In this document: in pieces, positions 3,430 through 39,818 of the stretch
Layout: each line of letters opens with the position of its first letter
How positions within the stretch are numbered: position 1 is the first letter of the stretch
Source of the DNA: Perna viridis
Taxonomy: Eukaryota
Assembly: GCA_037379345.1 (NCBI GenBank)
Contig: CM074511.1
Span: 48,490,862 to 48,554,861 of the forward strand
DNA: 64,000 nucleotides
Reading direction: 5' to 3'
Made by a program: the position numbers and the translations under genes
Notes under the pieces: model-generated
The model's database searches: none
Told to the model about the DNA's origin: nothing
The model's input: the letters and a program-made list of their open reading frames with translations, nothing else

Positions 3430-3590
3430 GTGGTCAAAACATGCCCCTGTTTTAATGCATTGGTGGTCAAAACATAACCTGCTCTAATGTATCGGTGGTC
3501 AAAACATGCCCTGTTCTAATGTTTCAGGGGTTTAAATATGCCCTGTTTTAATGTATCAGTGGTCAAAATATACCCTGTTCAGGTGTATCA
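3430..3590. repeat. Minisatellite, ~32-bp unit x5
   Basis: Repeated gtggtcaaaacatgccctgttctaatgtatc(g/a). Confidence 0.9.
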
Positions 3591-4291: not shown

Positions 4292-4515
4292 GATGAGGGC
4301 TGAAGGTTTGACTGGTATGGTGGGACCCAGTAATCTGCGTATAATCCCAAACGTGCAGTCTCTCGAAATCTTGAGCGAATCTCCACCATTTTACGTCTGA
4401 ACTTTGCAACATAGTCAGGAAATGACATGTTCACTTTCAAGACATGGCCACGTTTTATCTCTACTCTGAACACCCAGTTTGTTTCCGTGAATGGATTCGG
4501 AAGTCTGTACACAGA
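4292..4515 (-). CDS. Shared (constant) internal exon of the unidentified minus-strand gene: (SVYR)LPNPFTETNWVFRVEIKRGHVLKV...WVPPYQSNLQPS
   Basis: Only one frame is open across the exon and GC is raised. Acceptors are ttttcctcag|4515 and tgtacag|4504. A strong donor TC|gtgagt follows 4292, so the ORF-track TGA is intronic. Confidence 0.8.
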
Positions 4516-7100
4516 CTGAGGAAAATATCAAGTCACATCAATAGTGTAGAAGCAGTAATTTTTTTTAAAAAATTGTCAATTGACAACACTGAAGTTTCCC
4601 AGAATTCCAAACAGCATCAACTGTATCAATGTTTTATCACAAAAAAAGTTACATTTAAACATAATTTGAAACATTTAATGTCAATGTCTTTCTGGGTTTA
4701 TAGGTAGTGACATAAATTATTTCACCTTTAAAGTTGTAGAGAACACATAAAATACATTAGATTAACAATTCTCATATGGTAATGAGACTTTTCCAATCAG
4801 ATGCTTTTTCGATTTGTACAAGAAGTCATCATTGTAGCGGAAAATATGAATTATGATTTATAGATGAAATGAACTTGTATTCCAATATCCTTTGAATGAA
4901 ATGCAATTGTTTAAAGTACAATATTGCAACAGAACACAGCACTTGATCAATATATTGCAATGTTATCATGCCTCCTGAAATTTCAACTTAAGTTTCTGTC
5001 CATTTACCTTAAAAACATTGGTTAAGTCCAAGATAAAATCTTTTGAAATGAATAAGTCCTTAAAATCTAACTCTGTTTAACAGCAAATTATGAAATTGTT
5101 GCCATATTTAGAAAACAATTCATATGAAGCTAAACATAAATTTGACACAATGGTTCAGACCTTTAACTCTTCATTGCTCCTAAAGCCTAATAACAGCCCA
5201 TTAACAAATTACTTGTAAAAATATCTATTCACTATACATATACACAACATAGAACACAACAGTAAATATTTGATCATATTCTACTATCCTATTCCATTTA
5301 ATATAACTCCTCAGGATAACATTTCAATAATCACTTAATTTGGTTTTCAAATGTCTTTTCACAAACCTTAAGTTTCATAGAAGGAAATAATGAAAACCTA
5401 ATCGTTATGTAAGGTTATAGCCTGATCCTTCACTTCATGAACGTCAATTGTGTAAATGACAATGATATTTGATTATGTAAATAAAGCTTCATGGAAAGAT
5501 ATCCGAGATTGACAAGCAAAATAAATCTCCACTGCATTTATATGACGGATTGACATATGCTGATTTAGTACAAGGGAAATCCTAGTCCCCAAAGCCTTTC
5601 CGAAAGCTGAACCGCCAGGTTAACTTGTTAACAAAATATATTCTATTCAATCTATGACACAGCAAATAGTGAAAAAAGTTTTATCGAAAAATTACCATTG
5701 TTATAGTGCACCAGATTCCATTTAATTTCCAATCTCAAGGTATATTACATCTAAACACTGAAGCAATCTCTGCTCAGGGCAGTAATCACAGATTTAAATC
5801 TTCAATACCTGATAACGATTGTATGAAGTCCTTCATAGTCAGAAAACAAAGTTTGTGTCATTCTAACAAACCAAGTTGATGTCAACTAAAAGTCTATGTC
5901 GACAAAGTAGTAAAATCTTTCATTTGTCAGCACTACTTGATACAATTGAAAGTTACAGACTCAAAAAACCAAATAAATCCATTGACATTTAACTTATAAT
6001 ATCATTATCCCATCACAATATATATTGAAAAGTAAATCTTTTCATAACTCTTCCAGCTCATGTTGCCTTTATTAAATTTTTTTGATAACTTTTATTTTCT
6101 GGCATAATAAAAGATAACTTTGTGATAACCCTTCTTTTTTGTATATAAATTTCACACGAAACCAACTCCATGTGAGGGATCTAATCGGCTCAGAATCATT
6201 ATGTTAGTAGGTATCACCCAGATTTAATGGGACTCAATAGCCCTACAATCCTGGCTGATTGATTCAATACTACATTATTTATTTTCACTCAAGTCTAACC
6301 CCATTATGGCCATATTTCAAACAAACTTAATGTCTTTTAATTACATTTAAAATGAATTTGTTATTATCTCTTCAGCTTGTCTCCCTGATAGCCACTGTTT
6401 GGTTCATGAATTTACCATCAGTGACCAAGCATTTAATTGTGATGTAAATTGTTATATCTGTAAGTTTGTAGAATTTGATAGATATGAAATACTTGAGGTC
6501 TTCAAAATCTTAATACACAGTATTGTGATGAAGTACCAAATATCAATTTTCATCAAATAAAATCCAGTTTTGTTTCAATATTTGCTTTTCTTGCTTTTAA
6601 ATCTGATATTTGATTTGGGATCAGATCTGTTGTAAAATTTAATTAAATACCTATATAATGCAGAATTAAATCTAGGCAGGGGTTTATTAGTATTAAGAGA
6701 CAACATTCTGACCTCCATTCACATTTTAAAAAATCTTATCCTTCTTATAATATATCCAACAATAGCTCCACTACATTTGCGTAAATTTTTTATGAGGACT
6801 TAGGTTAAAAATACAATCATTTACTTTCTTTTATAAATGGAATATAAAAACAGATATTAATACAAATTATTCTTTTGAATAAAAGTCCATTTTTCTGTAG
6901 ACAATTACAGTAGCAATATACTTAAAACACATTTCAAATTTCTGAAAAATCACTACTACCCACATTTTCCTCTACAGAGAACCACTACAAGCAAAATCAT
7001 TCCAATTTGTCTAGCCTCTTCATATTTATGCATCAGATGTATTATATCAATGAAAAATATTCAAATTCATAACAGTAAACATGGCTGAAAAAATATTTAC

Positions 7101-7166
7101 CATTCCTGCTGCTGATGGCATTGCTGCAGGATGATCTGTGCAATGGGAATAACTCTCAAGTTGTTG
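7101..7166 (-). CDS. Candidate 66-nt exon (QQLESYSHCTDHPAAMPSAAGM in phase 0)
   Basis: Acceptor tttcttcccattgttgacgttgtctgtag, donor ATG|gtaaat. It is symmetric and in frame with the 4515 acceptor. Confidence 0.45.
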
Positions 7167-7422
7167 CTACAGACAACGTCAACAATGGGAAGAAAGATAA
7201 CTCTAATTTCCAGTATTTCAAGGGGGATAACTTCCCATCAATAAATTGGTTATTCTAACCTAAACTGTTGTTTTTACTTCTAATGTAGTCAAAAGAAAGG
7301 TAACTCTAATTCAATGATGTTTAGGTTTATTATGAAAATTGTGCTAAAATTACAAAAATAAATAATTTAAATAAATTTAAACAAAGGATACATTAATTGT
7401 CTTCATCTACTTCTTGACCTAC

Positions 7423-7601
7423 CTGTTTGGCTGAAGACGTATTGGTAACGTCTGTCGCCTGTGGTTCTGCATAAGTTTAAATCTAATCATTCTGTGTGAG
7501 TACATCTGTATAGGAGTAAGACTCCCTGTATTTCTGAGTAAATTAAGCTGTTGGTTAATCTGCATCTGTGACAATAATCTAGGAGTGAGTCCTCCGTCAT
7601 G
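7423..7601 (-). CDS. Internal exon, phase 0 to 2 (HDGGLTPRLLSQ...HRRQTLPIRLQPN)
   Basis: Acceptor cttttattttcttcag, donor AG|gtaggt, 179 nt open. It joins the 16278 donor to the 4504 acceptor in frame. Confidence 0.75.
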
Positions 7602-10600
7602 CTGAAGAAAATAAAAGCACTTTTTTTCATATAAATGATTAACAAATTTTGATTTTTGTCTTTTTCTTATTCTACTAATTGTTTTGTTTTATGTTTTTTT
7701 TTTCTTTTTTGTTTTACATGCATTTTTATTTTTTTTTTCCCAATGCATTGTATTGAATTTGTATTGAAACATGGACATACCTTAGTATAAGTTGTTTAAT
7801 GCACCCAATACAGTATACACAAAAATAACTAAAAGATATAAGTTATGATTTTAATGCTGAAGTCACTATGACGTCAACATAATATCAGATGACGTCAGGG
7901 AGACAATTGTGATGTCACAAATTGTTCTTTTGTATCTGATTTCTACACTGACCTCTACTTGATCTTAAATGAATTTTAGGTTATAACCTCACTGCATTTA
8001 ATATCAATTTTTCTACGAAAGTGGTATATATTCATACCAGCAGTTTTTGATTGTAGGGAAATCATTGGGGCAAACTTTAGTTTTGAGAAATGCTTCCATT
8101 GATAAGCCTGTATAGCACATGGGGAAGCAAGATAAATGAATATCAACACAGAAAATATTATACATTGTCTTTATCCTGCGCTGAACGAAGCTACTTCACC
8201 AGATGCTCAATTTTAAGTTGAAGAAGGTCTGTCAGCATTTTTCCAGCTCAGTATATATATTACTGTGCTTTGGAGCCTTTCCAGCACTATCATTTAAGCA
8301 CTGTTCTACCTACACTTATTGACTTAAAAATGAACTAAGGACACTGTTCTAAAATTAAAGGAAAAAAAACAATAGACCTGTGCTTTCACAGAAAGAACCG
8401 TGCTATTTAAAATATACTTTTTAAGACTTTTATTTGTTTAATCTTATACAGACCGAGAGGAAATTATATGGACCTCCTCACTTTCAAACTCAAAGCATGG
8501 CACAGTTGTGTATGTTTCTCTTTCTTCCACATGAATGGTCCAGAGTAAACTATATTCAAGAAGTATAATATAGCAAACAGTTCATAAATCTTCAAGTCAA
8601 CTTGCAATATATTGATGGGTTAGCCGTCCCAAAAAATTCAACAGACCTCAGCCAAGCTATGATCCATAAAATATTTTGGGGGAAGACTAATCAATTCATA
8701 TATTGATCCATTTGTTAGTTAATGGGAAGAACATCATGTACATCACTGTGTCTGAGGCTGTCAAAAAAATTACTTTCTTTCTTTGTTTCACTTTAAAAAA
8801 AAAAATACAGGAACTTTTTAAATGTAAGCTGGGTTTTTTACAGAGTAAATCGCCACAAAGACCATTATGTGTGAAATCTTATACAAATACGAAATGTATT
8901 TCTAAATGAAATTGTACCCTTTTACTGAGAATAAGAGAAAACTTTCTTAAAGTGTACAAATATCATTTGTACAAAAAAATGTTGATTTATTCAATTTTCC
9001 TTTAAAACAAGCAATGAATCCTTATTTCAGGAGGTTTAATAACAATTTACAAACTTTATTTTCAAACAGATGAAAATTTTTCACACAACTTCTTTACACA
9101 ATTATGCTGTTATCAACATATGTACCATAAAATGACTGCAAAGAACATTGCAAAATTTTACATAACAGGAAAGTTTTACTTACATGTTTGTTGTGTAATT
9201 ATGTCCATCTAAATGATTTTAAGAGGCAAATACCAATGTATTTTTTAAAAAAAAGCTCAAATCAATAGCTGCTGTACAGAGAATACTTGTGTAAAATCCT
9301 TATATTTACACTACTAATATCATACTAGATATATGATATTGATTCTCAATTCTAATAAACAACTAATTTATTTGAACATTTGAGTTTTGTGTCGCAATAT
9401 TAAGATCTTCTATACTAAAATCAATTCCAATAGAGAAATTCAAGATATATGACCTTTCATGTGAAAAGACTAGCAGCAATAATCCATTCTAATAATTAAA
9501 CCTCTGTGTGGAAATACTGTAATACCCGGTACCAGTTCTTCTCCAGAAAATTTCAAATTTATTCACAGTATTAGAATTGTACATTCAGATAAACAAATAA
9601 ATCATCACACATATATTCCAAGGAACCTAAATAGAAGCAAGTGAAATAGACACATGATATTACTATAAAGAATAATCCTCATTTAAGTAAATAAGTTTAA
9701 ATGTTCCTTTGACAAGTTAGGCTGTCTTATTGCCTCTTGGATGGCTACTTCATAAATCCTAAACAAATATACCCATATATAACATGAAAAGTCCTTCAGT
9801 TTTGGTGTGAGAGGTATATGTGGTGACAATTATCCCCCGTAGCCTGACAACAACTTATTACACACAGTCCATTTAACAAAACTTCATATCTTTAATATCA
9901 AATATAATTTGTTTTTGTGTTAAGACCTCAATTAAATAGGTCAAAAAGGATTTTTAAATAATTAGCACTCCTTTGTGTACCCCACAAATCATATCAATTT
10001 AGTTAATCAGTTAATTATCTTTAAACAGCATTAAGGGAATGGATCTTAATTTCAATAATCTATTTCAGTAATCTGGTACAACATTCATTGTATTTACATT
10101 TCTTTTTTTAATTTCTTAAACCCAAATTTTTTCTTGCAATAAAAGTTATGTAATAGTTTTAATGACTCACTTAAGCATTATACTCATAAGGGATTTAGGC
10201 CTTTCCTTAAACTTTACATGGTATTTCCTTAGATGGCACTGCAGAATGTAATATTGCATATATCTTTAATCAAAAACAAGTACCATCTTAAAAAAACAGA
10301 AAAAGCCAACGGAATATTTTTTCTTTCTTTTACTTATATTATACACATGGCATGCAAATTTTCGATACAGTTATTTCGAGCACCACTGATCTAACAGTAT
10401 TTAGAAATAGTAATCTGAAAACCGAAAAAAATAGCCAACACAGTAAATTTTTCTTTCTTTTACTTATTATTTTCTACATTTCATTCAGGAAATAATACAT
10501 GGCATGCAATTTTTGAGACACTTTTTTTTTAATGCCACAATGTTATCAGTATTTGGCCAATCAGGAAACAGAATTGTGATCAGGTGACTTGCATTTCCTC

Positions 10601-11982
10601 AAAAAAGGGTCTTTAAGGTCAAAAGGTAAAAAGTGGTAAAAAGTGAAATTATACAGAGACTGCATGGGAAAAAATATTGGCCCCAACAAATTTCAATTAA
10701 CTGTGCAATTTATTGACAAGATGGTTTATATTTGTGATGTCTAATTTTGTACTGTGAACGAGTCATTAGCTGTTACTCAAACTGTGCCAATTTTTGTTAA
10801 ATTTGAATAGAACCTGCTAAATAATTACAATGCATTGCCAGGCAATGTTCAGCAGCCAACCACGCAGCAACCATACATTCCCCAAATAACAACCTATTTT
10901 TTCTCAAAGAAAATCTGCTTAACACTCAGAACTGAATTTTTATTTTTGGCGTGTCCGAGCAGCCAAATTATTTTCACATAACGTATCGCCCTAGGCGGAA
11001 TTAATTTCTGAACATGTGCTTGAAAAAATGGTGACTCTTGCAATACTTGAGATTACAACACCATTCAACATTGTAGAGTTGTGAAATTTGATATTAAACT
11101 TCCAATCCTATTCTTAATTCAAAGCATGCTGGAAAATATAACATTGGATTTAACATGGATTGCTCCCCTTTAATTACTTCTTAATAAGTCAAAAAAAAAT
11201 TGAGTAAAAATGATATTTGCCCGTTAAAAATATTAATGCAAAACATATCTAATTATCTTAAGCCACGTGTTTCAAAATAAATCTAATTGCCAGATTAACG
11301 GCAGTACATGTGAAATGAAAAACCTTGTCGACACCATTTGTAAATGTATCACACAGTCCTATATAAATAACTGAATTTCTTTAAAATAATGTTAAATGTG
11401 CCTAAAATAGTGCAGGAGATGGAAGTAATCCAACTAATGCACATAAGAAATAAGAATGAACTCAAAGATAATCCTATTAAATAATTATGTGCCAAGATTG
11501 AAGTTAAATTCAAATAATATGTACACAAGGCAATTACTACAAGTACATGTATTTCTATTCAAACACAAAATGTTTTATACTTTTGATTTCATCCATTCTT
11601 TGAAATACAAATCACACAACTTAGAAATTACTTACAAAATTTCACCTGAACATGACAAGTTAATTGAAGTGATCGTCTCTGTTTTGGTAGGGAATACTGT
11701 GTGATGCACATAAATATATTCAATTTGGTTAATAACCACAAATTATATAGTTGCAACTATAACATTCAGCCTTTTTTGGCTTCAATATACGATTCAGTTC
11801 TGGTCTAGGTATCAGTAATAGATATTGCTTAGCTTTAACCGTTTTTCTTTGTTTTTCTGAACTCCTTTTTTTTCAAATCTTAATCACTATCAAAGCAAAA
11901 AGTATGATTTTGATATCAGATGAACTTCGATTAAAAGGTCAATGATTTTACAATACAGTTTATAGAGTCACCAACTGTGATT

Positions 11983-12136
11983 AAAGTCTCAGTCAGATTT
12001 TGCATCATAGCAAGGTGCATATCAAAGTCTCAGTCAGATTCTGCATCATAGCAAGGTGCATATCAAAGTCTCAGTCAGATTCTGCATCATAGCAAGATGC
12101 ATATCAATGTCTCAGTCAGATTCTGCATCATAGCAA
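11983..12136. repeat. Minisatellite, 41-bp unit x~3.8
   Basis: aaagtctcagtcagattctgcatcatagcaaggtgcatatc starting at 11983, 12024, 12065 and 12106. Confidence 0.95.
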
Positions 12137-14750
12137 GTTCCATAGCTAAGTTTTGATACCAGAACCAACAATAAAATTGAAGTTGCTGGTTGTTTTTTTT
12201 TAGCATTAAACAAACAAGTTAAAATATTTTTTTAGTTCTTCTGACATGAAAACTTTTTTGCTCTAGGAAACATCAATTTCTGAAGAATTAAAACTGTAAA
12301 AATCTTAAAACATTTCAACAAATGAGTCAAAAATCATTTCTATGTGGAACTTATATATTGACTAAATTGATTGATGGATATGATCTAACATCATATGGCA
12401 GATATTTTATGCATTTCAGGACAAGAAAGTTTGACCATTCAAACAGACCCTGCCTTGTACTAGCCCACATGCTGAGCCCAATCTTTAATGTGCTAGCTCA
12501 CAGAAACAACATGCAACCCCACTTGAACCCATCATTCCGACTTTAATACGACTGAGCCAACCAGAGTTGATTACTCATAAATACCAATTTTAAAGTCTGG
12601 GTGTGACTCAGCCATGAAAGAACCAACAACCTCCCATACAACACAGAGGCTACTGACAGAAATATTGTCTTGAAGGAATTTTTAAACAATGGTACCGGTA
12701 ATATGTTCACAAAAGAATTTTGATCCTTAGAGGTTTGCCTTGAGGGAGGTTCGGACATTACAATCCTAAGGACAGAAAGATAAAAATAATGTTCACTCCT
12801 ACCTTAGGGTAATATGATCTATCTGACTGGCAACGATCTCGATAATATATATCCCTTATTTTATCTCGAAACTCCATTTTAAGAAAGTCTTGAATTGCCA
12901 CAAAATATTATGTGCAAATAAATAATGTATTTAAATCAATCATTATGCATTCTGAATGTAAGAGTTTTAAGTGTGTTAATCCCCTAAGACCATATAAATT
13001 CTCCTGGCATCTAAATTTTTTCAAATTTATAATTTTACTATTAGTAAATTCAAATAAAAGTGTTTAAAACTACAATGGCAAGTTTACATTCTGTAGATTG
13101 TTAGATTTATGCAAATTCTGATGCATTAAAAATATTTTGAATTTAAAAAGGGAAAGTGATTTTTAACTGATTGTTGAACTGAATTTAATCTGTCAAGATA
13201 TATAGAATGAATTCAGCTTTAAGAGGGGTTAAGGGTTACCAATCCAAGTCCAATCTGGTGAATAATACAGTATCAATATACATTTTAGCTGAAACAAATT
13301 GCAGGGCCACTTGATTAAATTATGTTTTAAAAACAAAGTTAAAAGTTTTTTCAATAACTGAATGAATGTATCTATTTACTGAACAGGTTATTTCATATAA
13401 CCCTTTAGAAAAATAGAAAAACAAAAATTCTTATAATTTAAATTCTAATGGATTCCTTTGAAAAAAAATAGGACATTGATGGAACATTAAGTGATACTCA
13501 ACCACATAATGGTGAAAAAAGGGGGATAGCAAAATGTTCAAAATAGCCCTACTAGAAAACAACATTTGGGATTTTGATAAATATCAGTTTTCAAGTTATC
13601 ATCAAGACACTGTTGGGGATGGACAGATGGATGGAGACACAACTTTTCGCAGGGTATAATGTAAAACTGTGGCGGGGACAAAAATGGATTTGTATTGAAA
13701 ACCTTACTTTGTGTGGTATCATTTGATTTTGGACTGTTGACCAATGGACCTAAAGTTATGTCACAGTACCAAACCTGGTTATACAAACTAAGCCAATAAG
13801 AAAGCTAGTTACATATGTAATACAATTATTTACCAATATATTATATGGGCATTTTTATTGCAGATCACAGGGGCTGAAATAAGCACTGGTTTTAGGTCAA
13901 GAACCCTCAATTTCAGATGTATAAGCATTGAAATTTCATATATACCTAGGTTACATAATCACACATCACCACGACGGTTCCTATACAGGTAAAATTCAAT
14001 GGATGATCCCAGAAAAATCACTTTCTGTAATCTAACAAGGATGCATTACGGACAGTTTATCTACGGATTTTTACCTACTGGTATCTACCAAGGATTATTT
14101 AAGAAATTGGCTAATTGGCAGCAAAATTGATACAGATTGTTGCCGTATGATAGAGTTGGTAAAGGATACAAAAATAACTCTGTTTAATTAGAAAGGATAC
14201 CTATCAAGCCATATGCACTGCAGATATACAGTAGCGTGATACGGTATAAGTAGGGCCTAAAACAGATCAGTACGGTCTGATACAGAAAAGTAAGACAGGC
14301 TACAGAGCAGTACACAGAAATCCTTGACGAGTTGAACTTACAGATTAGCACAGGTTCACACTGTTTTGCCATGGATTAAATTGATCAGTACGTTCTATTA
14401 CTATTTTGTAAGGATGTACTGCAGTGGTTTGATCCATAGTAAAATTTTAAGCTTGCATAAAACTTGTCACTGATATACAAGTATTACTACAATCGATCAT
14501 GAATGGCTACGGTTTCTTTATGTACTGGTACGAACTAATACAGATCACCATGTATAAAGACAGATTGTACCCAAGGTAATCTGGCAAGATGATCCGTGAA
14601 TGTGTGACCTTGGCAATACCTAGGTCCTAGACCAACATACTTAAACATTTACTCTTATTGGGACTGCTCACTTTCTTCTGTTGGACCTTTTATGCAAAAA
14701 AAGTCAAGAACTTTTCCCTCCGGAAAGTATATTTGAACCCCTACAGACCA

Positions 14751-14905
14751 TTACTGAAATCCCCTCATCCATACAGATAGTAGAAGTTACTGAAATCCCA
14801 TCAGTTATCCTTACAGATAGTAGAAGTTATTGAAATCCCCTCATTCATCCTTACAGATAGTATAAGTTACTGAAATCCCCTTAGTTATCCCTACAGATAG
14901 TAGAT
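14751..14905. repeat. Minisatellite, ~36-41-bp unit x4
   Basis: Repeated ttactgaaatccc...tcc(t/a)tacagatagtagaag. Confidence 0.85.
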
Positions 14906-15752
14906 GTTGGGATCGGATATTACATCATCAAATATCTTGTCTAGAAAAAAAGGTATCAGCTACAATGAAAATTGGTTGGCAAAGAGCACTGGAAAAACAG
15001 CTGAACATGTGAAATATTGACTTATCTCTGATGAACAGAGACCAAAGTACTCTGAACAGAAGACTGTTCAACATGTTGAATTTTGCCTATTACCTACCTA
15101 AAAAATTAATGGAATGCACCATGTGACACTGCCTGATATGACACAACAATTCAAACCCTTAAAATTTTGGGAAAAGTTTGACACATATTTAACCTTGATA
15201 CAGTTCAGTACTTGGATTGTGATAAATTGGTTTAATCAAGCATATTTCTGAATTAAAATGAATGCTGTCACACTCAAAGAACTTAAAAATTTCAAGTTTG
15301 GACAATTATCTATTACAGTCCAATTTGCAAAGTCTAAATACCAAACAAGAAAAACTGTGAGCAATGCTCCCTGACTTTATACTCCAATCCCCCCCCCCCC
15401 ATTTGGTAGTATGCAACTTTTGATCTCCAAATTGATTTGGATCAAAATCCAATATAAACAGTGAACAATGGAAATATGTAATGAAGATTCTGTGAAAGTT
15501 TCATCAAATTAAATTCATAGATGTAGGAGAGGCAATGGACCTCCGTATTCTCATATTCATGAATGACAAAGTTCATGTTTTGATACTTGAAACCTCAAAT
15601 CTGACTTGGAACAAACTTTTAAGTAAAAGGTTCACACTGGGAATATGTAATAAAGATTTGGTAAAAATTTCATAAAATTCAATTTAGTGGTGTATGAGGA
15701 ATAATAGACATGTACCCCTTACTTTTAAGTGAGGGGGGGGTAGGGGTATATA

Positions 15753-15861
15753 ATGATTGAGGTGTCTTTCCTTCTGTCTGTACTTCCTTCCTTCCCTTAT
15801 GAAGAGGGTTACCCATCTGTAATGAAAGGAAGTAAGTACAGAAGGACAGACATCTCAATCA
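15753..15861. repeat. ~110-bp imperfect inverted repeat (hairpin MITE-like)
   Basis: tgattgaggtgtct...ctgtactt pairs with aagtacag...agacatctcaatca. Confidence 0.7.
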
Positions 15862-16277
15862 CCATACATTTGCTACTCAAAAGTATATTTTATTTAGTGA
15901 AAGATAATGCAGCATTGATTACCCACTAAGCAACCACTTGGGTCAACACAGAGAAAAAAACAGCATTAATTCAAATTAGACACTTCTAAAGATTTACTGT
16001 TTGTAAATAATGAACTTAAACTCAGAAATATACACTTGATAAGGTTCTTTTAACCTTGAAAACATTCATATTTATTACTTTTACTTTTGAAAGACAACTC
16101 AAAACTTATTATTTGTAAAAGGAGAAAAAGTGGGGTTCAAAACCACAAGACAAGTCCTTGTGCTGCAGAAACCTTTTTGCAATCATAAGAAAATTTGATA
16201 TATATTTGAATAGCTGGCAATGTTTTAGAAGTACATGTAACATGTACATATACATTTATAATAATAATAATACTAAC

Positions 16278-16838
16278 CTCTTGATCAGATGGGTCTGGTG
16301 GTGGTAAAACCCGAATCCTATTAACAGTCTCACACACTGTACATTTACATGATATCCCATGTTCACGATGTTCCTTGAAAACTTTTTCTACAGGAGATGC
16401 ATTGATTATTCTGGATGCTTCACACACACCACAGGGTCCTCGGCATCTCTTGTCTTTTTTGTGAACATGTACAAGTTTAGGAAGTTTTAAAACATCTTCC
16501 CTTCTAGAATCTGCTCTTGAAAATGCCCTGGAAATACTCTCAGCCTCTCTCTCTAACCTGGAGGTCCATCTTAAACGAATTGTTTCCTCCTCCCTTTCCT
16601 TGATGTAAGCTGGTTCATGATTTTCGATGGTTTCAAACTTTTTTACCTCAAATTTCTTGGTTTTATCCAATGAAATGACATCATCAGGTTTATCTTTCAC
16701 TTTGTGAGGATCATCAATAGGTGGTAATGAAAATTTCACAACTTTTGCTCGCTTATGAACTGGCTGATTCAGAATATAGCGAATTTTTTGTCGAGCAAAA
16801 GGATCACGTTTTTGTGTCAGCAATCTTGGAAGCTTCAT
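16278..16838 (-). CDS. Alternative first coding exon, 187 aa (MKLPRLLTQKRDPF...PPPDPSDQE), phase 0
   Basis: Longest ORF in the window. An in-frame TGA lies just upstream, the start is aaaATGaag, and the donor GAG|gttagt is followed by AT-rich intron. Confidence 0.8.
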
Positions 16839-18221
16839 TTTTCCAATTTTTCCCAATCATAATTTCTCAGGTAATTTCACGATATATATCCTTATATTTC
16901 ATTATGTCAAATACTAAACAAACATTATGTCAATCAGTATATTATAAATATCGTCATTTATTTACTTATTATATTATTGTTAAACAAAGCCTTTATTAAA
17001 AATCCTGTTATGTATTATTTCAACACTTGAAAATTTATTCCATAGTTGCATAACAGTATAGAAATCTGATTAATCCAAATTATAAGCACATGAAAAAAAG
17101 TAAACACTAGAGCTATAACTTCACAAATTTTAATTGTTCCAACTATAACCACTTATTCTTTTCTCTGTCACCAAATGTCATGGGTAATAATACTACTATT
17201 TTTGTTAAACAAAACTACATTATATCGTCACATTTAACTGCATATAAATGTGATAACCATCGGTGAAATGTTGCCAAAGCTGTACTGGCCTCAACATTTC
17301 AACAATACGATAACTGCATTTAAAACATATCAAAATACATTGAATATAGCTAAATCTCATTGGAAGCCAGGGAGTCATAAAATTCCATCGAGTACTTTAA
17401 GAGGTTGGAACAGAAGATAAAAGAAATCGTTTGGATTAGGAAATTTATTCTAGTTTTCAATTGCTAAGCTACTAGTGATTGTTCAAGGGTTTTGTAAAGG
17501 ATTCATACTAAATTAAGAAATAAATAAGACAGAAATTTCAATATATTTTATCAATAAAGAAATTAAATTTTAATCACTTAATTTCGAGTAAGTTGCAACA
17601 AAAATATTTGTTATGGTAATATTTTGTTTTGACCAAATTTCAGCGCTTCATTTCCCAAAAAAAGCCCCCACAGATTGGTAAAAGATAATATATAAAATAA
17701 TTTAAACTCAAATCAATTCCATAAGAAAACCATTTGACAAGGTATCAGTACATCAAAGTGTGGACCCTATTATGTTACATTAGGTCACTCCTAGCGGGTG
17801 GTGTTTTCAATACACACAATATCCAGGCACATGTAAATTAAATAATTTTCAAGATATACAATGATTTATTTGTACAATTCAGTTAAAGACTTAGTTAATG
17901 GTTTCTGAATTCTGATAAAAACCTAAGGTATTATGTTTTGCAACTGTTAACCATTTATAATCTATGGACTACATTATAGACCTTAGGTATAGAAATTATG
18001 TGGCAATAAGTCAATGCAAGTTAGGTGCATTTGCATAAAAATAATAAATAAAATCTGATACTATTTGTATACATACATCTAAGTAATATCACAAAAAACT
18101 GGTTACTTGTAGAGTAGACTATAAAATTTGAGTTATCTCCCATCGCCAACAGAGGAGAGAAAGTGAAATGATACTAGTTTGAACACTTCTAGTCACTATC
18201 GCAGAGAATGTCCCCACTTAC

Positions 18222-18299
18222 AGTAAACCAATTACTTTGATTTAAATCCACCAGAATCAATTGATTCAAGGATTTGGGCCTCATTTGGTTTCTTAGCAT
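18222..18299 (-). CDS. Candidate alternative first exon (MLRNQMRPKSLNQLILVDLNQSNWFT), phase 0
   Basis: 26 open codons from ATG to ACT|gtaagt. Confidence 0.4.
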
Positions 18300-21045: not shown

Positions 21046-21098
21046 CCTCTTCTGATTCCAGTTGTAGATTTGGAGTCCTCAATAAACAGACGCATCAT
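21046..21098 (-). CDS. Candidate alternative first exon (MMRLFIEDSKSTTGIRR-G), phase 2
   Basis: agaATGATG runs open to GG|gtaggt; the phase matches the 4504 acceptor. Confidence 0.5.
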
Positions 21099-21776
21099 TC
21101 TGCTAACTGATTCATTATCTCTGACAAGACAATAGTATCTTTTATACTATATTGTAGAGAGGAAAACCCATGTATTGAGATGACCACTAAAAGAGGTCTA
21201 GGAATGATAACGGTTTTCTGACAAATAATGGTAATAGTGTTGCTAAGTATAATTGCTATACCAAACCATAAGTTAAGTACAAAATCTGTACTAAACATGA
21301 GTATAGTAGACTATTTATCATAGAAACATAATTGTAAATAAAGATACCTTAAAACAATACATTGATTTTGTTAAGGATAATTGACTTGCATTAGTGGTAT
21401 CATTAGTCAGATCCTTTTGCAAAAATTTTAAAGCAACTTGAGAGTCCAAACTGTAGTTCTAGTTTTAGAACAGAAGCTCACAGACAGCAACATAAACACA
21501 TGCACCATTATAATATTATGGAACCACAACTTAAATTACATCCGGAAAATGAGAAACAAACTTTCACTATAGTTCTAAAAACAATTGCATGGCCAGTGCA
21601 TAGTACAGTATACAGTGTTCTACAACATTCATCAATGTCAGAAGAAAATTTAAAAGATTCTAAAAACAATTAGTTTTATACATCAATTTCAATACTAAAG
21701 ACACATTTTCCAAATTTTTATCCCTTTTAAAAAAAAACATTTTATGACAAAGCTGAAGATTTTCCATTAGTATTTT

Positions 21777-23930: not shown

Positions 23931-24202
23931 CGGTCCTTAGCAGGTATCATCTCTGTCATTTCCTTTGACAATCTTTGCTCGTGTTTTCTCTGTAATTCTT
24001 CTATTAACTCTCGCACTGTTGGGATCCTGCTTCGTTTCTGGCTACGGACCTGCATCCTAACACGCACCCCGGAATTGGCATACAGCCTAGTCAATAGGTG
24101 ACTATTAGTAGGAAGTTTAAGTACCATGCTGTCCTTCAGGGCTACCCTGTCCTCCATCAAAGCCCCATCCTCTAAAGTTGTCCATGAACGATGAGGCTTC
24201 AT
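23931..24202 (-). CDS. Alternative first coding exon, 90 aa (MKPHRSWTTLEDG...EMIPAKD-R), phase 2
   Basis: GC-elevated ORF from ATG ending at CG|gtaagc; CG+A gives Arg in frame with the 4504 acceptor. Confidence 0.78.
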
Positions 24203-24948: not shown

Positions 24949-25066
24949 CAGCCAAACAAACCGAAGTATACGGTAAAGTCAACAACAATACAGAGAATAG
25001 AAATGTCAGCCAAACAAACCGAAGTATACAGTAAAGTCAACAACAATACAGAGAATAGAAATGTCA
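24949..25066. repeat. 58-bp tandem duplication
   Basis: cagccaaacaaaccgaagtatac...gaaatgt at 24949 and 25007. Confidence 0.95.
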
Positions 25067-31000: not shown

Positions 31001-31658
31001 CCAATGGCTTCCTTAAGATTTGATAATACCCGAGTAGATCATCTATTCTCTATAAAGCCAGAGAAAGCTACCTTGTTTAACTAGTTACCTTAAGCTCTCA
31101 GAATTGCTTTCATGCTTGTATGTTGTTCTTTACATTGGTGGTAGTTTTCTTTGCCTGTTCTCTGTCAATTGACAGTTGAATTTTGAATATTGCTATATCT
31201 TTATACATGTATATTCCCAGTAATGTTGAAAAGTAGTCATGAGGGTAAAATAAGGCAAAATGAAATGTATTTCCTGTTACCCTACCTATCCTATTATGTT
31301 TGTACTTACCTTAAACATTTTATGGCCATTTTGCCCCAAGCACTGTCTGGACTAAAGTCTAGATTGTTCCCCATTAACTGACATAATGTAAATGCTTTTG
31401 AAAAATAAATTCCCCTCCCTACCTAACTTTTTTTTTAGCTGAAAGAAGAAAACAAGATTAATACAATTTTTTAGCATATTGGGTTTCGAACTAAATGTTA
31501 ACACCAGTACATCATTAAAACTAAACAAAAATATCTTAACAATACATGTAGTAATTATCTCATATAAAATTCATCAATGTAAATATCTTCATCACATCAT
31601 AACCACTTTACTTCTACAGACATTCATATACACAAAAAATAAGCAAATGACTGCTTAA

Positions 31659-32040
31659 GCGTCAGTCCTTGTAAGAATCAGGCAGTAGGTGAAACATGGT
31701 ATGAAAAAAACCCATCATTTTGATAGTGTAATTTGACTATTTGCAGCATCAGAATCAAAGAAAACAGACAAGATTTTCCATATCATGCTGGACCACTGAA
31801 TTACAATTTTATTGAAATGCACTGAAAATGAACATTTCAAGGACAGATAACTCTGTCAAATCCTCATTTTTCTAAGATTCTATCGAAAAATTTCTGAGCA
31901 AAGCCAATGATGCAGAGATCAAATAATGATCTTTTCAAATAGAGAAAGTATCCTTGAGTGACATTTTATTGTCAGATTAGTGGGGCTTTGACATGCATGT
32001 TTCTGATTTTTTTCCATTTTGCCTGATTCTTACACATAAC
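31659..32040. mobile_element. Degenerate TIR element related to the TTAA-flanked element at 46758
   Basis: Inverted repeats gtaagaatcaggca and tgcctgattcttac. Confidence 0.55.
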
Positions 32041-33419
32041 CATCTGCAAACCACTGTATCAGGAACTTTAAAATGTACATTTTCAAAAGCATTTTGTTCT
32101 CAATAAAAATCCTTTATATGTTGCACATACACTAATACCTATACATGTAAATTAAAATGACCATGCAATTGCTACAATCTAATGACTAATATCACTTTTT
32201 ACAGAAAAGAGAACAAAGTTAAGGAACCTGTTAAACAAGTCAAAACCACACACAGAAATATAAATACAGTTCAATTTCTGTAATGTTTTACTACAACCAA
32301 TAGTGTTGTATTTTACTGCCATGAGTAACAAATTATTTGATTAACGAAAAGATGATTGTAGGCCTAGTGTAAGAAAAGTTTCAGAAATAATGCCATTAAT
32401 GGATAATAAAAATTAAAAAAAAACACTCTTAAATTGTTCAGGAATTTAAACAGCTTTAGTTAAGCAATGACACCAAATGGCCACATTTCCTTAAATAAGA
32501 GTCCATCAACTGATACATTTCCCTGGTTTATGTTATTGACTATGATCATACAAATGTACCATTAAAAACTTTAACACAAAATCAACATTTATTTCATGTA
32601 AAATATCCAAGGTACATTGTACTTCAATAAGCTATTAGTGTTAGACCAACTTTTTCTCATCAATAATGAAATAAACCTGAATCCTTTTAATAGAAATTCC
32701 AAAATAAGCTATAATTTTACAGATAACATGGGACAATTCTACAAAAGTTGTTAGGATGTTCTCAAATACATGTACATATATTTTAAAGAGTATCTGAACA
32801 CTACAAGAAAAAACTTGTTCAAAGGGAAATAACTCAAACCAACAAACTGCCTTTCTGTGACACTCACAAAAGTCAAGTTCAGGGACCAATACTAATAGTA
32901 ATCTGGTAGTCCTGTGCCAACCTAATTTTCAAGAGGGCTACTGAAAAACTTTCATGATTGTCCAATAAGCTATCTAAATTCTGCCTTATTTTTCATAAGA
33001 ACAGAACAGTCATTACCATCTGCAGACTACCTGTTTTATCTCTGAAGTAGTCCTGTTGACCAGCAAATAAATTAAGTAAGTGTCAAACCCTGACGTAAGG
33101 TTCATGAAAACAGTAATTAACCCATTTCATTTCAAACCACATTTATTCAATAATTACAGATGATAAAGTAGGAATTAGAAGAAACTAATCCTGAATGGTT
33201 TCACTAGACTTATGAATAGTTAAACTTTCCTATACTGTCACTCATTCAAAAAATTATTTCTGAAACACAGGCTTTCATTTATGCTTATTCTAAAAGAACA
33301 AATCACTCACCAAATGATTGTGGCAAAAATGAGTAGGAAAAAGTACATACAAGTAAAAAACAGACATGAATAATTGTTACTCGCTATCTCCAAATACAAC
33401 ACAAGAAAGAGAGACTTAC

Positions 33420-33573
33420 TTGATTCTGTCCTGCTTTGTTGGGTCATCACTTTTGTTCTGTCTGTCACCATCACCATTCTTAACTGGTGTCTTCTTCCTG
33501 TTGGTTTCTCCTTCCAAACTTTTACCAAAACTGATGCCAGTTACTTTCTGTCCTTCTGCATTAGCTAAACAAT
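33420..33573 (-). CDS. Second exon for the distal first exons, phase 1 to 2 ((D/Y)CLANAEGQKVTG...DPTKQDRI-K)
   Basis: Acceptor ctttctttttatttcag, donor AA|gtaagt. It is open in the frame set by the 38175 and 37921 donors. Confidence 0.8.
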
Positions 33574-36500
33574 CTGAAATAAAAAGAAAGTCTTTTGCAG
33601 AACAGTGCTGTTTGAACCATTCCCCATAATATAGCTAGAAAATAATGCAGTTAATTTTCAGCAACTACTACTAGTATAGTACCAGTTAATAACAAAAAAT
33701 GAAAATCAATCCTAACCTAAAAAATCAGGTTTACAGCTTAAAACATTAATGAACAAATAATTCTAGATGAATGCAACAAGCTTCTTGAGCTAAAATTAAA
33801 TATTGTAAGTGTGCCGGTAATGTTTTAATGAACTAATTGTCTGCATTGACAACCAAAAGATAAGGTCATCATGTGCTTAGTTCTTCTAAAGTAATGTATA
33901 TTTTGACTTCAGAGAACTTTAGAGTAATGGTTTCTGTGACACCAGTCGGGCTATAATAGCTTAACATATTTTAAAAATCTTTATCTAGAACTACTAATAA
34001 AAGCCCGACACTCAGAAGCAATCGAAAGCAACAGTCTTTGCCATTGTCTATCTCATTACAAAACCTCTTCAATAATTCAAACATTGGTTCAAACTGGTAC
34101 ATGGGTAATTGTACTCAATACTCCTAAGTTCTCAATACATGAAGATCGAGTCTCAAATGCACATTTGACATTGATACTTAACATGCTTAAACAAAATTAT
34201 CACTATAAAATTATGCAATATTGGAGGCAGAATTGAAATCCATTTCTTTATATCTCATTCATGAGTTCTATAATGTAATTTCAAAAAATAAGTCATTGTT
34301 GATGAACACATTTTTATATTATTTTGATTTTGATATAAGTACTATAATTTTCATAAGTTCCAACATGCCGCAATGTTCTTCCATTGAAACCACTTTTAAT
34401 CCCTTCTTTGAACGATTTTTTTATTTAGAAACGCACAATAGTTTAATAATGTAAGTGCTTCATTGTTTTCAATTGCTTATGAAGAGCTGCGTATAGAAGA
34501 ATTTGATGTACCGGTAAACAAAAGCTAAAGATTCCCTTGGTATGCTACTCTTGGTACATGTATGTGTTATCATACAAATTTGATCAAAACACTGTTTGTA
34601 ATATTCTGCCGGAAACTGAGACTTATAATTATCAATTTAAGTTCATATACAGTCAAAACTGTCTTTTAAAAGTAACCTACAAAGAGACAGAAAAATTGTG
34701 GTCGCATAAGACATAGTCTTTATGTACAGGTGACTTTATACATAATGCACTTCATAGGGATATCATACAATACAAAAAAAATGTACAATTAACTGATAAT
34801 AAAATCATAGGCATTCCATTGCTGACAGACATTTTGAAGAACATCATTTCACAATTCCCAAACCAAACAGTCAGATACACATAAGACCAAAATTTTAATT
34901 TTTTGGGGTATTCTGAAGAAGTTTTCTACACCCCAATATCAAAATATGAAACAGTTTATACAAATAATGAAGATGTAAAACAAATACATTATGTATAATG
35001 AATGAAATACAAAGCATTCATATGAAAAGGTTATTGAAATGGCAAAAATTATTTACACTTTAAATGTACATGTAGTCTTGGTTCAACCATATCTATTTAC
35101 CTATATAGTCAGGTGTCAAGGGGCCCGGGTCAACAGTATAGACCTTAACAGTCTCTAGACTATATGTGTAAATTTTGACAAAAATATCAGCAACTGATAG
35201 ATGATAATATGAAATAATGACAATACTGAAAAGTTAGGTTACAAAATCCAAATATGTTATCAATGTGTTTTATAGATTAGAGTTGATGGCATTGATATAA
35301 AAAGCTTACATATTTTATGTTCACTGACCTCTCATGAAAAAGTATGAACTATAATTTTAATTATGTTTTTTTTTCTTGTAACTCTGATTTACTTTCCTTG
35401 ACTTAAAAACCTTAAGAGAAATCTAATTGAAAAACACTTGTAGGAATTTTCATATTGTATCTAATAAAATCAAGTTTTGAATTCATGAATTTAAATTTAA
35501 TTTGAAAAAAAAAAAAAAAAAAAAAAAGGGCAATAACTAATTACTTCACAATATAGAGTAGTAATTGTGTAAATTGTAACAACATCTTATAGTAAGTCAT
35601 ATCCCCTTTATAAAAAAGCCACATTTACTACAATGATCATATTTTCCCCTACTTATACCAACAAAAATCAAATAACCCACAGGTCACTGGACACAAATAT
35701 TAGTAAGAATTCAACAATTGAATTAAGTCCTTGGACAGAATAACATTCTTAGCTTTTTCAATAAAAATCATCTTTGTTAAATTTATCCTTTGCAGACAAA
35801 TCAATTTACTATAATCAGTTCACACTGGTTTAAACTCTACTTCTTTTCATTTTCAGTCCAATAACTACTTATAAAAAGGTAATCAAGTTGATTAAAAATG
35901 TTCTTTTTGTGTCTTTTCATGTCAAATTGTTAAGTTGTCACACTGTTATTCAGGAAAGATGAATACAAAATTAGCTGACACACTGTATTACATTGTAACT
36001 AAAATGAACACCGAGATGGAAAAGTTGCAAAACTACAAATACATTTAAGAAAGTTCATCAGAAATGTTATTTTGCTCACATATAGTAATACTCACTACCA
36101 TAACTCTAAATTATTCACTGCTTTGGTCCCTCATGAGGAAAATGAATTTAGGTGAATAAAGTGTAATAGGTAAAAGAAACCATTGTCTAAGAAAAGTTGG
36201 TATGAAGGGTAATTCAGTCACTCAGGTATTGGTCGTACAAACCAATGTCAATCTTAGGGTACCCTTAGCTTTTATTAAAACTTATTCTTCCAATGTTCCC
36301 AAGGAGATAAACTCTCCAATCAGAGGTCTAGTGGGTCAATACTCAGGCCAGAAAACTTGCCATTAAATTGTCAATCTGGCATCAACAACTTTCCAGAATA
36401 TTGGAAATAACACGCAATCCTCCAAAGACAGTAAAGAAAAATTATGAAAGATAGTTTTCATCAAGTGTTCAATATATATATGCTTTACCATACTGGTAAT

Positions 36501-37920
36501 ACACTATATTCTCTACATAGTAAAAATTACAGCACTTCAGACATGTCTAATCTACTGGTAAATTCATTTTTGGAAACCCATTTATTAAAAAGCTAATCAA
36601 CCAGATTACAAAAATATGACAGATACATATCAACAGCTTCCCAGACATTGAAAAAAATATTTTTATAACTAACTACTTCTATTAAATTTATGAACTCCAC
36701 AGTGTAAACATTGTTTGAGTGCTTTATTAACTTCAATATTCCTTTCTTTTGTTGTCATTTGACAAGCAAATATTGCATTAACGTTACTGACTGGTATCTT
36801 TTAATATCAAATATGTGCTTCAATTAGTTAACAAACATAAAGAGAAAAAATAAAAAGACACTGTGAACCATCCGTGTGATAATATAATGAAAAATGACAC
36901 CATTCACTAAAACTTCAAATTATCAATTGAACCAAAACAGCTTCAGCTAGTACAGTTAATACAAGAAAGAAATGGTGCCAATAGGTTATCTTTGAAAGCT
37001 GTTTATGCAAACAAACTTGCCTTTTTAATCTATGTATTATTTGCCAAGTAAAAGTTTTATATCCTCATAGTAAAGACCTTTGATAACTATCTGATAATAT
37101 AGTATCTATATCTATATAATATAGCTACAAAAACAAGTGTAGATTTATACTTCAAAGCATAGACTTGTAATTACATTTCTCCCATTTTAAGTTGGTGATT
37201 GAAATTGCATGCGACTTTCTAACCATCAAGCAGTGATTAAATTTCTGTGAGTTTTCCCGCCATTTTACATAACTGAATTTTCTACAGATTTCATGAGAGA
37301 AACCAATTCTCCTTCAGCCTATTCTTGATTTAAATCATTACTCCACTCTCTATGGTAAAATTAAGGTTTTATCGTGCTCAATAAAGCCTGCATGATGAAA
37401 ACTGTTTTAACTTTCTTCAGTGGAGAAATAATTAAAACCACTCTTACTGAAGGAGAATCTGTATTTAATTCCAGGTCTATGTTCAGAGACTACAGGGGTT
37501 CAAGTTTTCCATCAATTAAAAGTTGCAGTAATTTGAAGCAACACCAAATTTTTTTTAATGACAAGGGGAATTTGTACAGTTTTTTTTACCATATAAATGT
37601 ACTCCTGTATTCATAGACAAGTATTGCTGTAGTTAACACATGTAATATATACAGGTATATATGATAAAATTTTGAAAACCTGATCTGCCCACGTGAAATA
37701 TCTAAATCAGCTATAATAAACAACTCTCTCAGAGTCTCGAGAGAAAATTAAATGTATTCTGAACATCCTACTTATAGATTTTTATACAAAAAATGATTTT
37801 GTATATGGTACAAGGTATCCTAGCTGTAATAACTAGATGTGTGTTGGTGCTGATGGTAAATTGCCCAGACACCTTGTTGGGTATATATATAGATCTATAT
37901 ATCGAGTTCACCCCACTTAC

Positions 37921-38113
37921 ATCGAAATTGTATGTTGTTAATATATGAGCTTATTTCGTGGCATTTCGAGCAGTTACATAATGCCAATAGGTGGAGTAAG
38001 TGATCCTCCTCGGAGATTTTTTTCACATTCATTTTCAGTGTGAAAATCGGTTTTGCATGGCTTCGATCTTTCAGTTCAGTTGTGTCAAGCTGTGATAGCG
38101 AAACGGCTAACAT
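37921..38113 (-). CDS. Alternative first (or cassette) exon, 64 aa (MLAVS...HLLALCNCSKCHEISSYINNIQFR), phase 1
   Basis: ORF ends at T|gtaagt, in phase with the 33573 acceptor. Confidence 0.6.
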
Positions 38114-38132
38114 TATGAGATCAGTCCCGGTT

Positions 38133-38144
38133 CTACCATGGTAG
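38133..38144. promoter_or_regulatory. Palindrome CTACCATGGTAG, resembling an RFX X-box
   Basis: Perfect 12-bp palindrome 20 nt upstream of the 38113 ATG; similar to GTTNCCATGGNAAC. Confidence 0.35.
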
Positions 38145-38174
38145 CGGTCAAATTTCGTAAAAAAAATTACTTAC

Positions 38175-38406
38175 CGGAATTATCGCTTTGAATAAAAGTG
38201 TTAGATTTCAGGAGTCGGAAACTACTTCTGTGTTCCACTGGCAATAGTACTTTTTTCTTGTATCGCAATTGGTGGGGTGGCGTTTTTGGTACATCATATT
38301 TTAACTTCACAACTGGTGCAACAACCTGCGATCTCTCCAATGTATAACCTCTGGAGAAGGTTAAGTCCGTCGTTGATCGTGTAAATGATTTTACTATATC
38401 ACTCAT
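38175..38406 (-). CDS. Most distal first coding exon, 77 aa (MSDIVKSFTRSTTDL...FIQSDNS), phase 1
   Basis: ataATGagt start and G|gtaagt donor; in phase with the 33573 exon. Confidence 0.78.
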
Positions 38407-39817: not shown

Positions 39818-39818
39818 T

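What the first reader, a model, noticed from the sequence alone, without database searches (positions are those of the whole stretch)
4292..38406. Array of unrelated alternative first exons converging on one constant exon (variable N-terminus locus)
Seen: ATG-initiated ORFs end exactly at donors at 38406-38175 (phase 1), 38113-37921 (1), 24202-23931 (2), 21098-21046 (2), 18299-18222 (0) and 16838-16278 (0). Phase-1 exons are converted to phase 2 by exon 33573-33420, and phase-0 exons by exon 7601-7423. Every route enters the single open frame of exon 4504-4292, giving QDRIK-, AKDR-, GIRRG- or QPNR-LPNPF. Known: protocadherin, UGT1A and PDE4 loci use such variable/constant designs. Inference: this is one unrecognised gene with about 4-7 promoters producing N-termini of roughly 18 to 246 aa. 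I cannot assign the constant region to a protein family.
Basis: partly seen in the sequence, partly recalled or inferred. Interest (0 to 1): 0.85.

Follow-up and report, generated by a model that had tools for sequence, protein, structure and literature searches.

The report
Many-headed mussel gene, shared tail off-window

Summary
One minus-strand gene with many alternative 5' exons is really there, but the convergence point is wrong. RNA contigs of this species join 16278 to 7601, then join 7423 to an exon starting at window coordinate -33237 (G000:C1:48457624). They skip exon 4504-4292.

Spliced relatives and RefSeq isoforms agree (M. galloprovincialis LOC143067591 to at least X19; M. californianus LOC127699443 to at least X14). 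Heads homologous to 38406+33573, 24202 (with or without a 75-nt cassette), 16838+7601 and 4504 each join the same four common exons directly.

- Exon 4504 is itself a head.
- 21098-21046 is part of cassette 21120-21046.
- 38113-37921 probably hides a shorter first exon, 38032-37978.
- 18299-18222 has no support and is at chance level.
- Eight more lie left of the window.

The heads are mutually unrelated, and several are conserved in other mollusc classes. The tail is predicted disordered and ends in a DUF5537 helix. This is a sound, larger-than-described alternative-promoter locus of a known kind, already auto-annotated in relatives and uncharacterised. The scan earlier found a similar design in a septin gene of this genome.

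The parts
43602..43683 (-). ATG at 43683, 27 codons + 1 base, donor gtaagg, phase 1. It feeds exon 33573.
   Evidence: tblastn E about 1e-7 to the heads of M. trossulus X7 and M. edulis X8 (P0095, P0096); the motif LPRM..NAFE is also in scallop heads P0037 and P0039. Sequence context. No RNA laid here.
38175..38406 (-). First exon, 77 codons + 1 base, phase 1. It feeds exon 33573.
   Evidence: 64-69% identical over 84 aa to the heads of Mytilus isoforms P0026 and P0099-P0102, which continue into the 33573 homolog and then the common exon. A scallop isoform (P0036) shows the same order.
37921..38113 (-). Inside it, 38032-37978 (head MNVKK.., donor gtaact, phase 1) is the probable homolog of a Mytilus first exon.
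   Evidence: No isoform matches the 64-aa ORF. Mytilus genomic contig L023 has the first exon of P0097 about 95 nt after the donor of the preceding exon. That is the same position, with the same ATG-AAY-GTG start and the same phase, but sequence similarity is weak. Inference only; no RNA.
33420..33573 (-). Shared second exon for the upstream group of first exons. Enters in phase 1 and leaves in phase 2.
   Evidence: 41-55% identical to the segment that follows four different first exons in Mytilus (P0026, P0095, P0097, P0098) and then joins the common exon. The junction codon AA+T = N matches Mytilus.
23931..24202 (-). First exon, 90 codons + 2 bases, phase 2.
   Evidence: 71-82% identical to the heads of mussel isoforms P0021 (a spliced RNA contig of a mytilid), P0025, P0029 and P0130, which join the common exon directly. 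49-55% identical in scallop and gastropods (P0038, P0063, P0073). Exon GC 0.47 against 0.29 in the flanks.
21046..21120 (-). Optional 75-nt cassette exon, phase 2 to 2, used after exon 24202.
   Evidence: 57% identical to the 25-aa insert of Mytilus isoforms P0024, P0087 and P0089-P0091, E 6e-5. Acceptor tgtcag at 21121-21126, same length and phase as in Mytilus.
18222..18299 (-). No support; probably a chance ORF.
   Evidence: No isoform match. Not conserved in three mussel contigs that cover the neighbourhood. GC 0.33 against 0.34 in the flanks. 35 comparable ORF-donor combinations on this strand.
16278..16838 (-). First exon, 187 codons, phase 0. The transcript contig reaches about 16866.
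   Evidence: RNA contigs of runs X1 and X3 join its last bases to exon 7601. 64-72% identical to mussel homologs, with conservation ending at the donor. It heads the 480-486-aa Mytilus isoforms (P0031, P0117, P0119, P0125, P0127).
12803..12877 (-). 25 codons, donor gtagga, phase 0. It feeds exon 7601.
   Evidence: 68% identical, E 5e-9, to the head of M. galloprovincialis X5 and M. edulis X7 (P0113, P0121), which continue into the 7601 homolog. No RNA laid here.
7423..7601 (-). Shared second exon for 16838 and 12877. Phase 0 to 2. It splices to common exon 1 and not to 4504.
   Evidence: Contigs of X1 and X3 show exon 16838's end on its 5' side and the start of common exon 1 on its 3' side. 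93-98% identical to Mytilus. An X2 contig (depth 38) reads through the acceptor to at least 7643, so a start just upstream is possible.
4292..4504 (-). It is in fact another alternative 5' module, phase 2 in and phase 2 out, with an internal Met at 4428. There is a second AG 11 nt upstream, giving a possible exon start at 4515.
   Evidence: Expressed and spliced at donor 4292 in X1, X2 and X3. The contigs run on upstream of the acceptor to 4516, 4533 and 4587 without any joined exon. In relatives it is at the N-terminus, either starting at the internal Met (P0010, P0013, P0016, P0122, P0126, P0134) or after a 14-aa first exon (P0030, P0133, P0135).

Best explanation
The window holds the 5' two fifths of one minus-strand gene of about 85 kb (window 43683 down to -41623; G000:C1:48449238-48534544). 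It is the ortholog of the 'uncharacterized protein' genes LOC143067591, LOC127699443 and LOC134716281 of Mytilus.

Four common exons encode about 245 residues. This tail is predicted to be disordered apart from one C-terminal helix that matches Pfam DUF5537. The first common exon has a single acceptor at window -33237 that takes phase 2.

Upstream of it lie at least 14 alternative 5' modules spread over about 77 kb. Each starts with its own ATG and ends in a phase-2 donor. They are mutually unrelated in sequence.

The modules are organised in two tiers:
- First exons 43683, 38406 and probably 38032 (phase 1) share second exon 33573-33420.
- First exons 16838 and 12877 (phase 0) share second exon 7601-7423.
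- Exon 24202 goes directly, or through cassette 21120-21046.
- Exon 4504-4292 is a module of its own.
- Eight shorter first exons to the left of the window go directly.

Which head a protein gets is most likely set by which promoter fires. That step is inferred; no start-site data were available. The transcript then splices its head to the common acceptor and skips the acceptor-bearing exons of the other modules, even where these would be in frame.
For: Shown in this species: RNA contigs from two studies (X1, X3) carry exon 7601-7423. On its 5' side are 30 bases that occur once in 114 kb, at 16280-16309. On its 3' side are 30 bases that occur once, at the start of the exon at -33237. Exon 4504-4292 is expressed and spliced at 4292 in three runs, but no contig joins anything to its acceptor.

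Shown in relatives: spliced mytilid RNA contigs P0010, P0017, P0021 and P0033 carry four different heads on the same tail. RefSeq isoform sets of four Mytilus species, scallops, clams, abalone, Gigantopelta, Pomacea and a chiton have different heads on one tail.

tblastn places 14 head homologs and the four common exons collinearly on this genome at 52-98% identity. All donors checked are phase 2 into the common exon.

All 15 aligned orthologs hit DUF5537 at the C-terminus. AlphaFold gives mean pLDDT 45.5 and one helix, 277-299. All-against-all blastp of the heads gives nothing significant.
Against: Only one route (16838 to 7601 to common exon) was seen directly in this species' RNA. The other routes rest on homology to isoforms that are partly automatic Gnomon models.

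No transcription-start data exist, so 'one promoter per head' is inferred. Logan contigs drop rare forms, so minor isoforms that do pass through exon 4504 cannot be excluded; they would be in frame.

The function of the protein is unknown.
Confidence: 0.8

Rival explanations
1. Same gene, but far fewer real heads in this species. Part of the 14 modules are annotation artefacts of relatives or dead exons here, and only about 4-7 promoters are active.
For: Only the 16838/7601 and 4504 modules have RNA support here. Several heads are short (24-40 aa) and known only from Gnomon isoforms. Three Mytilus pieces have no detectable homolog here: the heads of P0098 and P0030, and a 16-aa cassette.
Against: All 14 homologs keep an ATG (one was not checked), an open frame and a phase-2 donor in this genome. 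Four heads are confirmed by assembled spliced RNA in a related mytilid. Several are conserved as far as scallops, gastropods or a chiton.
Confidence: 0.1
2. One reading: every route passes through exon 4504-4292, which is the first constant exon.
For: Phase arithmetic allows it: 33573, 24202, the cassette and 7601 all end in phase 2, and acceptor 4504 takes phase 2. The part of exon 4504 upstream of its internal Met is conserved as protein, so something splices into it.
Against: RNA contigs of two runs join 7423 to the exon at -33237 and skip 4504. None of about 60 isoforms from relatives combines another head with the 4504 homolog. Eight further first exons lie downstream of 4504 and cannot pass through it.
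Confidence: 0.05
3. The ORFs are consecutive internal exons of one long linear transcript.
For: 38406 could be joined in frame to the body of ORF 38113 through a 71-nt intron (my reading). The phases of 38406, 33573 and 4504 chain correctly.
Against: Each head starts with a conserved ATG and has no acceptor-compatible open frame upstream. The X1 contig begins about 28 nt upstream of ATG 16838. Relatives never chain the heads. A phase-2 exon cannot enter the phase-0 exons 16838 or 7601 in frame.
Confidence: 0.02
4. The ORFs belong to several separate genes or are chance ORFs.
For: ORFs of 60-90 aa are frequent here: 80 ORFs of 60 aa or more in the window, and many ORF-donor combinations. The exon peptides have no Pfam domain.
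Against: There is direct RNA linkage from 16838 through 7601 to the tail. The exons are homologous and collinear with multi-isoform single genes in many molluscs. This explanation does hold for 18299-18222, and for 38113-37921 as drawn.
Confidence: 0.03

Closest known systems
Orthologous RefSeq loci: Mytilus galloprovincialis LOC143067591 (isoforms to at least X19), M. californianus LOC127699443 (to at least X14), M. trossulus LOC134716281, Mizuhopecten LOC110442007, Pomacea LOC112574238, Liolophura LOC135471455
   Same: Same gene: collinear exons at 52-98% identity in Mytilus (the distant molluscs mainly in the tail), the same heads, the same two shared second exons, the same 75-nt cassette and the same four-exon tail with a DUF5537 end.
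   Different: These are automatic annotations named 'uncharacterized protein'. No paper mentions them. In this species three Mytilus pieces were not found, and the junction residues differ.
PDE4A-D type multi-promoter genes (from my own knowledge)
   Same: Unrelated N-terminal regions, each from its own 5' exon and promoter, joined to a common body. Some regions are shared by subsets of isoforms, like exons 33573 and 7601 here.
   Different: The PDE4 body is a folded enzyme and its heads are known targeting regions. Here the body is a predicted disordered protein of unknown function and the role of the heads is untested. No sequence relationship.
Clustered protocadherin and UGT1A variable/constant loci (from my own knowledge)
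   Same: An array of ATG-bearing 5' exons over tens of kb that converge on one acceptor of constant exons.
   Different: Their variable exons are paralogs from tandem duplication and encode whole domains. Here the heads are unrelated, 25-246 aa long, arranged in two tiers, and some modules carry their own acceptor-bearing exons that must be skipped.
Mussel septin alternative first exons
   Same: Same genome and same design of several heads on one core, likewise already visible in Mytilus annotation.
   Different: About four heads there against at least 14 here, and a known protein family there.

Membership tests
Ortholog of Mytilus LOC143067591 / LOC127699443 | Collinear homologous exons along the whole gene, heads and tail | tested here: met
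   tblastn of about 60 isoforms onto 114 kb of this genome places heads and common exons in the same order at 52-98% identity.
Pfam DUF5537 (PF17690) | Match to the profile at or above the gathering score of 28.4 bits | tested here: inconclusive
   Gastropod and chiton orthologs pass (33.2 and 36.1 bits). The closest mussel proteins score 26.5 and 27.1, just below. All 15 aligned orthologs match at E up to 0.01, but only profile positions about 111-159 of 160. The last exon of this genome is 96-98% identical to those mussel proteins.
Variable-first-exon / constant-exon locus (general design) | Several ATG-bearing 5' exons converge on one acceptor of shared exons | tested here: met
   One route is shown by RNA. 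The others follow from spliced RNA contigs and isoforms of relatives, plus phase-2 donors in this genome. The acceptor is at -33237, not at 4504.
Variable-first-exon / constant-exon locus (general design) | Each variable exon has its own promoter or start site | not testable with these tools
   No CAGE or 5'-end data. The only hints are contigs that begin about 28 nt upstream of ATG 16838 and contigs that run upstream of acceptors 4504 and 7601.
Protocadherin / UGT1A-type array | Variable exons are paralogs of each other | tested here: not met
   All-against-all blastp of 19 module peptides gave no convincing match. The best hit was E 0.002 over 20 aa, with a tiny database and many comparisons.
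   It is skipped in X1 and X3 contigs. It is absent from most isoforms of relatives, and eight first exons lie downstream of it.

The most novel reading that the evidence does not exclude
The locus is an ancient 'one tail, many heads' system that predates the divergence of several mollusc classes. At least 14 promoters each graft a different, individually conserved short peptide module onto one disordered DUF5537 tail. Promoter choice may then select the protein's partner or location. Upstream transcripts must also skip up to three in-frame-compatible acceptors, which would make the locus a natural case of promoter-coupled splice choice.
Probability: 0.4. Interest if true: 0.55.

Novelty: new member of a known kind. 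Interest (0 to 1): 0.4.

Why it matters
It corrects the gene model. The shared part is off-window, the 'constant' exon is a head, and the array is about twice as large as proposed.

Biologically, the locus has an unusually large set of non-paralogous N-terminal modules. Several of them are conserved in other mollusc classes, on a protein family with no known function. That makes it a convenient entry point for asking what DUF5537 proteins do and how promoter use is coupled to acceptor choice.

The principle of alternative first exons is well known, and relatives already carry the isoforms in automatic annotation. It is therefore a solid but not surprising finding.

Tried and rejected
- Pfam on the single exon peptides found nothing above noise.
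- A profile of 15 orthologs against all PDB sequences gave no hit at E up to 10.
- The ESM Atlas, searched twice, gave no usable hit.
- Literature searches for DUF5537, PF17690 and five LOC names found no paper.
- AlphaFold on the ortholog alignment gave a disordered model, pLDDT 45.5, so no fold search was run.
- Homologs of three Mytilus pieces were sought in 114 kb and not found: the head of P0098, the 14-aa exon before the 4504 homolog, and a 16-aa cassette.
- The idea that the conserved exon-4504 peptides P0011-P0015 were vertebrate was dropped. The two that carry a source organism are gastropod, Nucella and Elysia.
- Contigs L016-L018 were fetched but not used.
- The single read-laying run covered only 2001-8000, so the junctions of 38406, 33573, 24202, 21120 and 12877 in this species remain untested.
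- Every exon was searched on its own by reference, and the joined-protein search was left out.
Full report
**What the sequence shows.** The window is AT-rich (about 31% G+C). It is G000:C1:48490862-48554861 of a 723-Mb genome that earlier notes of this scan call a mussel. My homology results agree: the best matches are Mytilus. They have ATG starts, open frames and GT donors, or pyrimidine tract plus AG for the three internal exons, and the stated phases.

**Is it more than chance?** Length alone does not settle it.
- The window has 80 mechanical ORFs of 60 aa or more.
- ATG-ORFs that end at a donor-like site are common:

| Minimum codons | Minus strand | Plus strand | Shuffles |
|---|---|---|---|
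| 17 | 53 | 47 | 26 |
| 26 | 35 | 22 | 13 |
| 64 | 11 | 3 | 0.55 |

- The 17- and 26-codon 'first exons' therefore carry no weight by themselves. The longer ones are enriched on the gene's strand.

**Identity of the gene.**
- The 187-codon exon 16838-16278 has 67-70% identical counterparts in genomic contigs of other mussels. Similarity stops exactly at the donor.
- The peptide of exon 4504-4292 finds mollusc proteins. Among them is spliced RNA contig P0010 of another mytilid, which starts at the exon's internal Met and continues for about 245 residues.
- A sister contig, P0017, has a different head on the same 245 residues.
- On this genome that other head lies at window -23569..-23814, which is downstream of the supposed constant exon. 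The shared residues lie in four exons:

| Common exon | Position in G000:C1 |
|---|---|
| 1 | 48457399-48457624 |
| 2 | 48454853-48455008 |
| 3 | 48450130-48450345 |
| 4 | 48449238-48449390 |

- So exon 4504 cannot be constant.

- Contigs of X1 and X3 contain exon 7601-7423 flanked by foreign sequence on both sides.
- The 5' flank is the last 30 bases of exon 16838-16278. It is unique in 114 kb, at 16280-16309. The two extra aligned bases, 7603-7602, are the AG shared by the exon end and the intron end.
- The 3' flank is the first 30 bases of common exon 1 at window -33237, also unique.
- The route is therefore 16838 to 7601 to the common exon, skipping exon 4504.
- Exon 4504-4292 is itself expressed. 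Its depth is 186 in X2, and 2-4 in X1, X3 and X16. It is spliced at 4292.
- No contig joins an upstream exon to its acceptor. The contigs simply run on to 4516, 4533 and 4587.
- A mytilid RNA contig (L019) likewise runs about 80 nt upstream of the homologous acceptor.

**Relatives.** A search with the shared part found 56 proteins. The cluster listings add many named isoforms:
- M. galloprovincialis LOC143067591, to at least X19
- M. californianus LOC127699443, to at least X14
- M. trossulus LOC134716281 and M. edulis
- scallops, clams, abalone, Gigantopelta, Pomacea (to at least X6) and the chiton Liolophura

Their heads differ and their tails agree. Mapped on this genome, the heads and common exons are collinear.

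In the window:
- 38409-38179 followed by 33574-33449
- 24202-23930, with or without 21122-20979
- 16838-16200 followed by 7586-7413
- 12877-12800 followed by 7586-7413
- 4515-4291

Left of the window there are first exons at about -1496, -10774, -15571, -18823, -23569, -26674, -30182 and -31606.

- A sensitive search added a first exon at 43683-43602 (E about 1e-7).
- In no isoform does the homolog of 33573, 24202, the cassette or 7601 precede the homolog of exon 4504.
- That exon is always at the N-terminus, from its internal Met or after a 14-aa first exon.

**The two doubtful exons.**
- A Mytilus genomic contig (L023) carries the first exon of isoform P0097 about 95 nt after the donor of the 38406-type exon.
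- The corresponding window segment is 38032-37978, with the same ATG-AAY-GTG start, the same phase 1 and a gtaact donor. Similarity is weak, so I rate this as probable only.
- 18299-18222 is not conserved in three mussel contigs that cover the neighbourhood. Two non-coding blocks upstream of exon 16838 are conserved there.

**Architecture and mechanism.**
- Every supported route ends in a phase-2 donor and enters the single acceptor at -33237.
33573 serves phase-1 first exons and 7601 serves phase-0 first exons. These are shared second exons of two sub-groups and they go straight to the tail.
- The heads are unrelated to one another. This separates the locus from protocadherin or UGT1A arrays and brings it closer to PDE4-type multi-promoter genes (my own knowledge).
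- Several heads are old. The 24202, 7601, 4504 and -26674 types are recognisable in scallops, clams and gastropods, and the last two also in a chiton.
- Inferred, not shown: each head has its own promoter, and promoter choice sets the head.
- Transcripts from upstream promoters must skip the acceptors of the cassette, 7601 and 4504, although the cassette and 4504 would be in frame.

**The protein.** The tail matches only the C-terminal third of Pfam DUF5537. Two distant orthologs score above the cutoff and the mussel proteins score just below it. AlphaFold predicts disorder with one helix at 277-299. No solved structure, paper or atlas cluster helps. My working model is a disordered adaptor whose alternative heads supply different short binding or targeting motifs. 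This is inference.

**Limits.** Only one route was seen in this species' RNA. The other routes rest on homology, partly to automatic models. 

**Verdict.** The true locus is about twice as large as proposed. It is a new, well-documented member of a known kind and is already visible in the annotation of relatives. The scan earlier found a similar design in a septin gene of this genome (s1-763676).

Noticed in passing
window 39800-42300 (+ strand): G+C-richer stretch with broken ORFs that hit DUF1758 (putative peptidase, which I recall from Bel/Pao elements) and DUF5641 weakly. It is probably a degraded LTR retrotransposon remnant lying in the intron between first exons 43683 and 38406, on the opposite strand.
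   Followed up: partly
window 328-600: About 270-bp dispersed repeat with at least 40 copies at 87-89% identity on many chromosomes of this genome. It looks like a SINE-type element.
   Followed up: no
window 17219-17527 and 17743-17860 (minus strand): Two non-coding blocks upstream of first exon 16838 are 70-74% identical in genomic contigs of other mussels (L012-L014). They are candidate promoter, enhancer or untranslated exon sequence.
   Followed up: no
The high-depth X2 contig starts at 4516, which would fit use of the upstream site or a branch point there. The Mytilus isoform with a 14-aa first exon uses the site homologous to 4504. Undecided.
   Followed up: partly
window 4381: C in the assembly but T in all three raw RNA reads of X16. 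The other runs' contigs show C. Most simply an allele.
   Followed up: no
window 4292-4504 versus 7423-7601: Relative contig depth of the two modules differs strongly between runs: X2 186 against 21-38, X3 4 against 23, X1 3 against 8. This hints at sample-specific head usage, but contig depth is a poor measure.
   Followed up: no
G000:C1:48490376-48490756 (window -105..-485, minus strand): 127-aa open frame of a type that looks like a mobile-element protein fragment, lying in the long intron.
   Followed up: no
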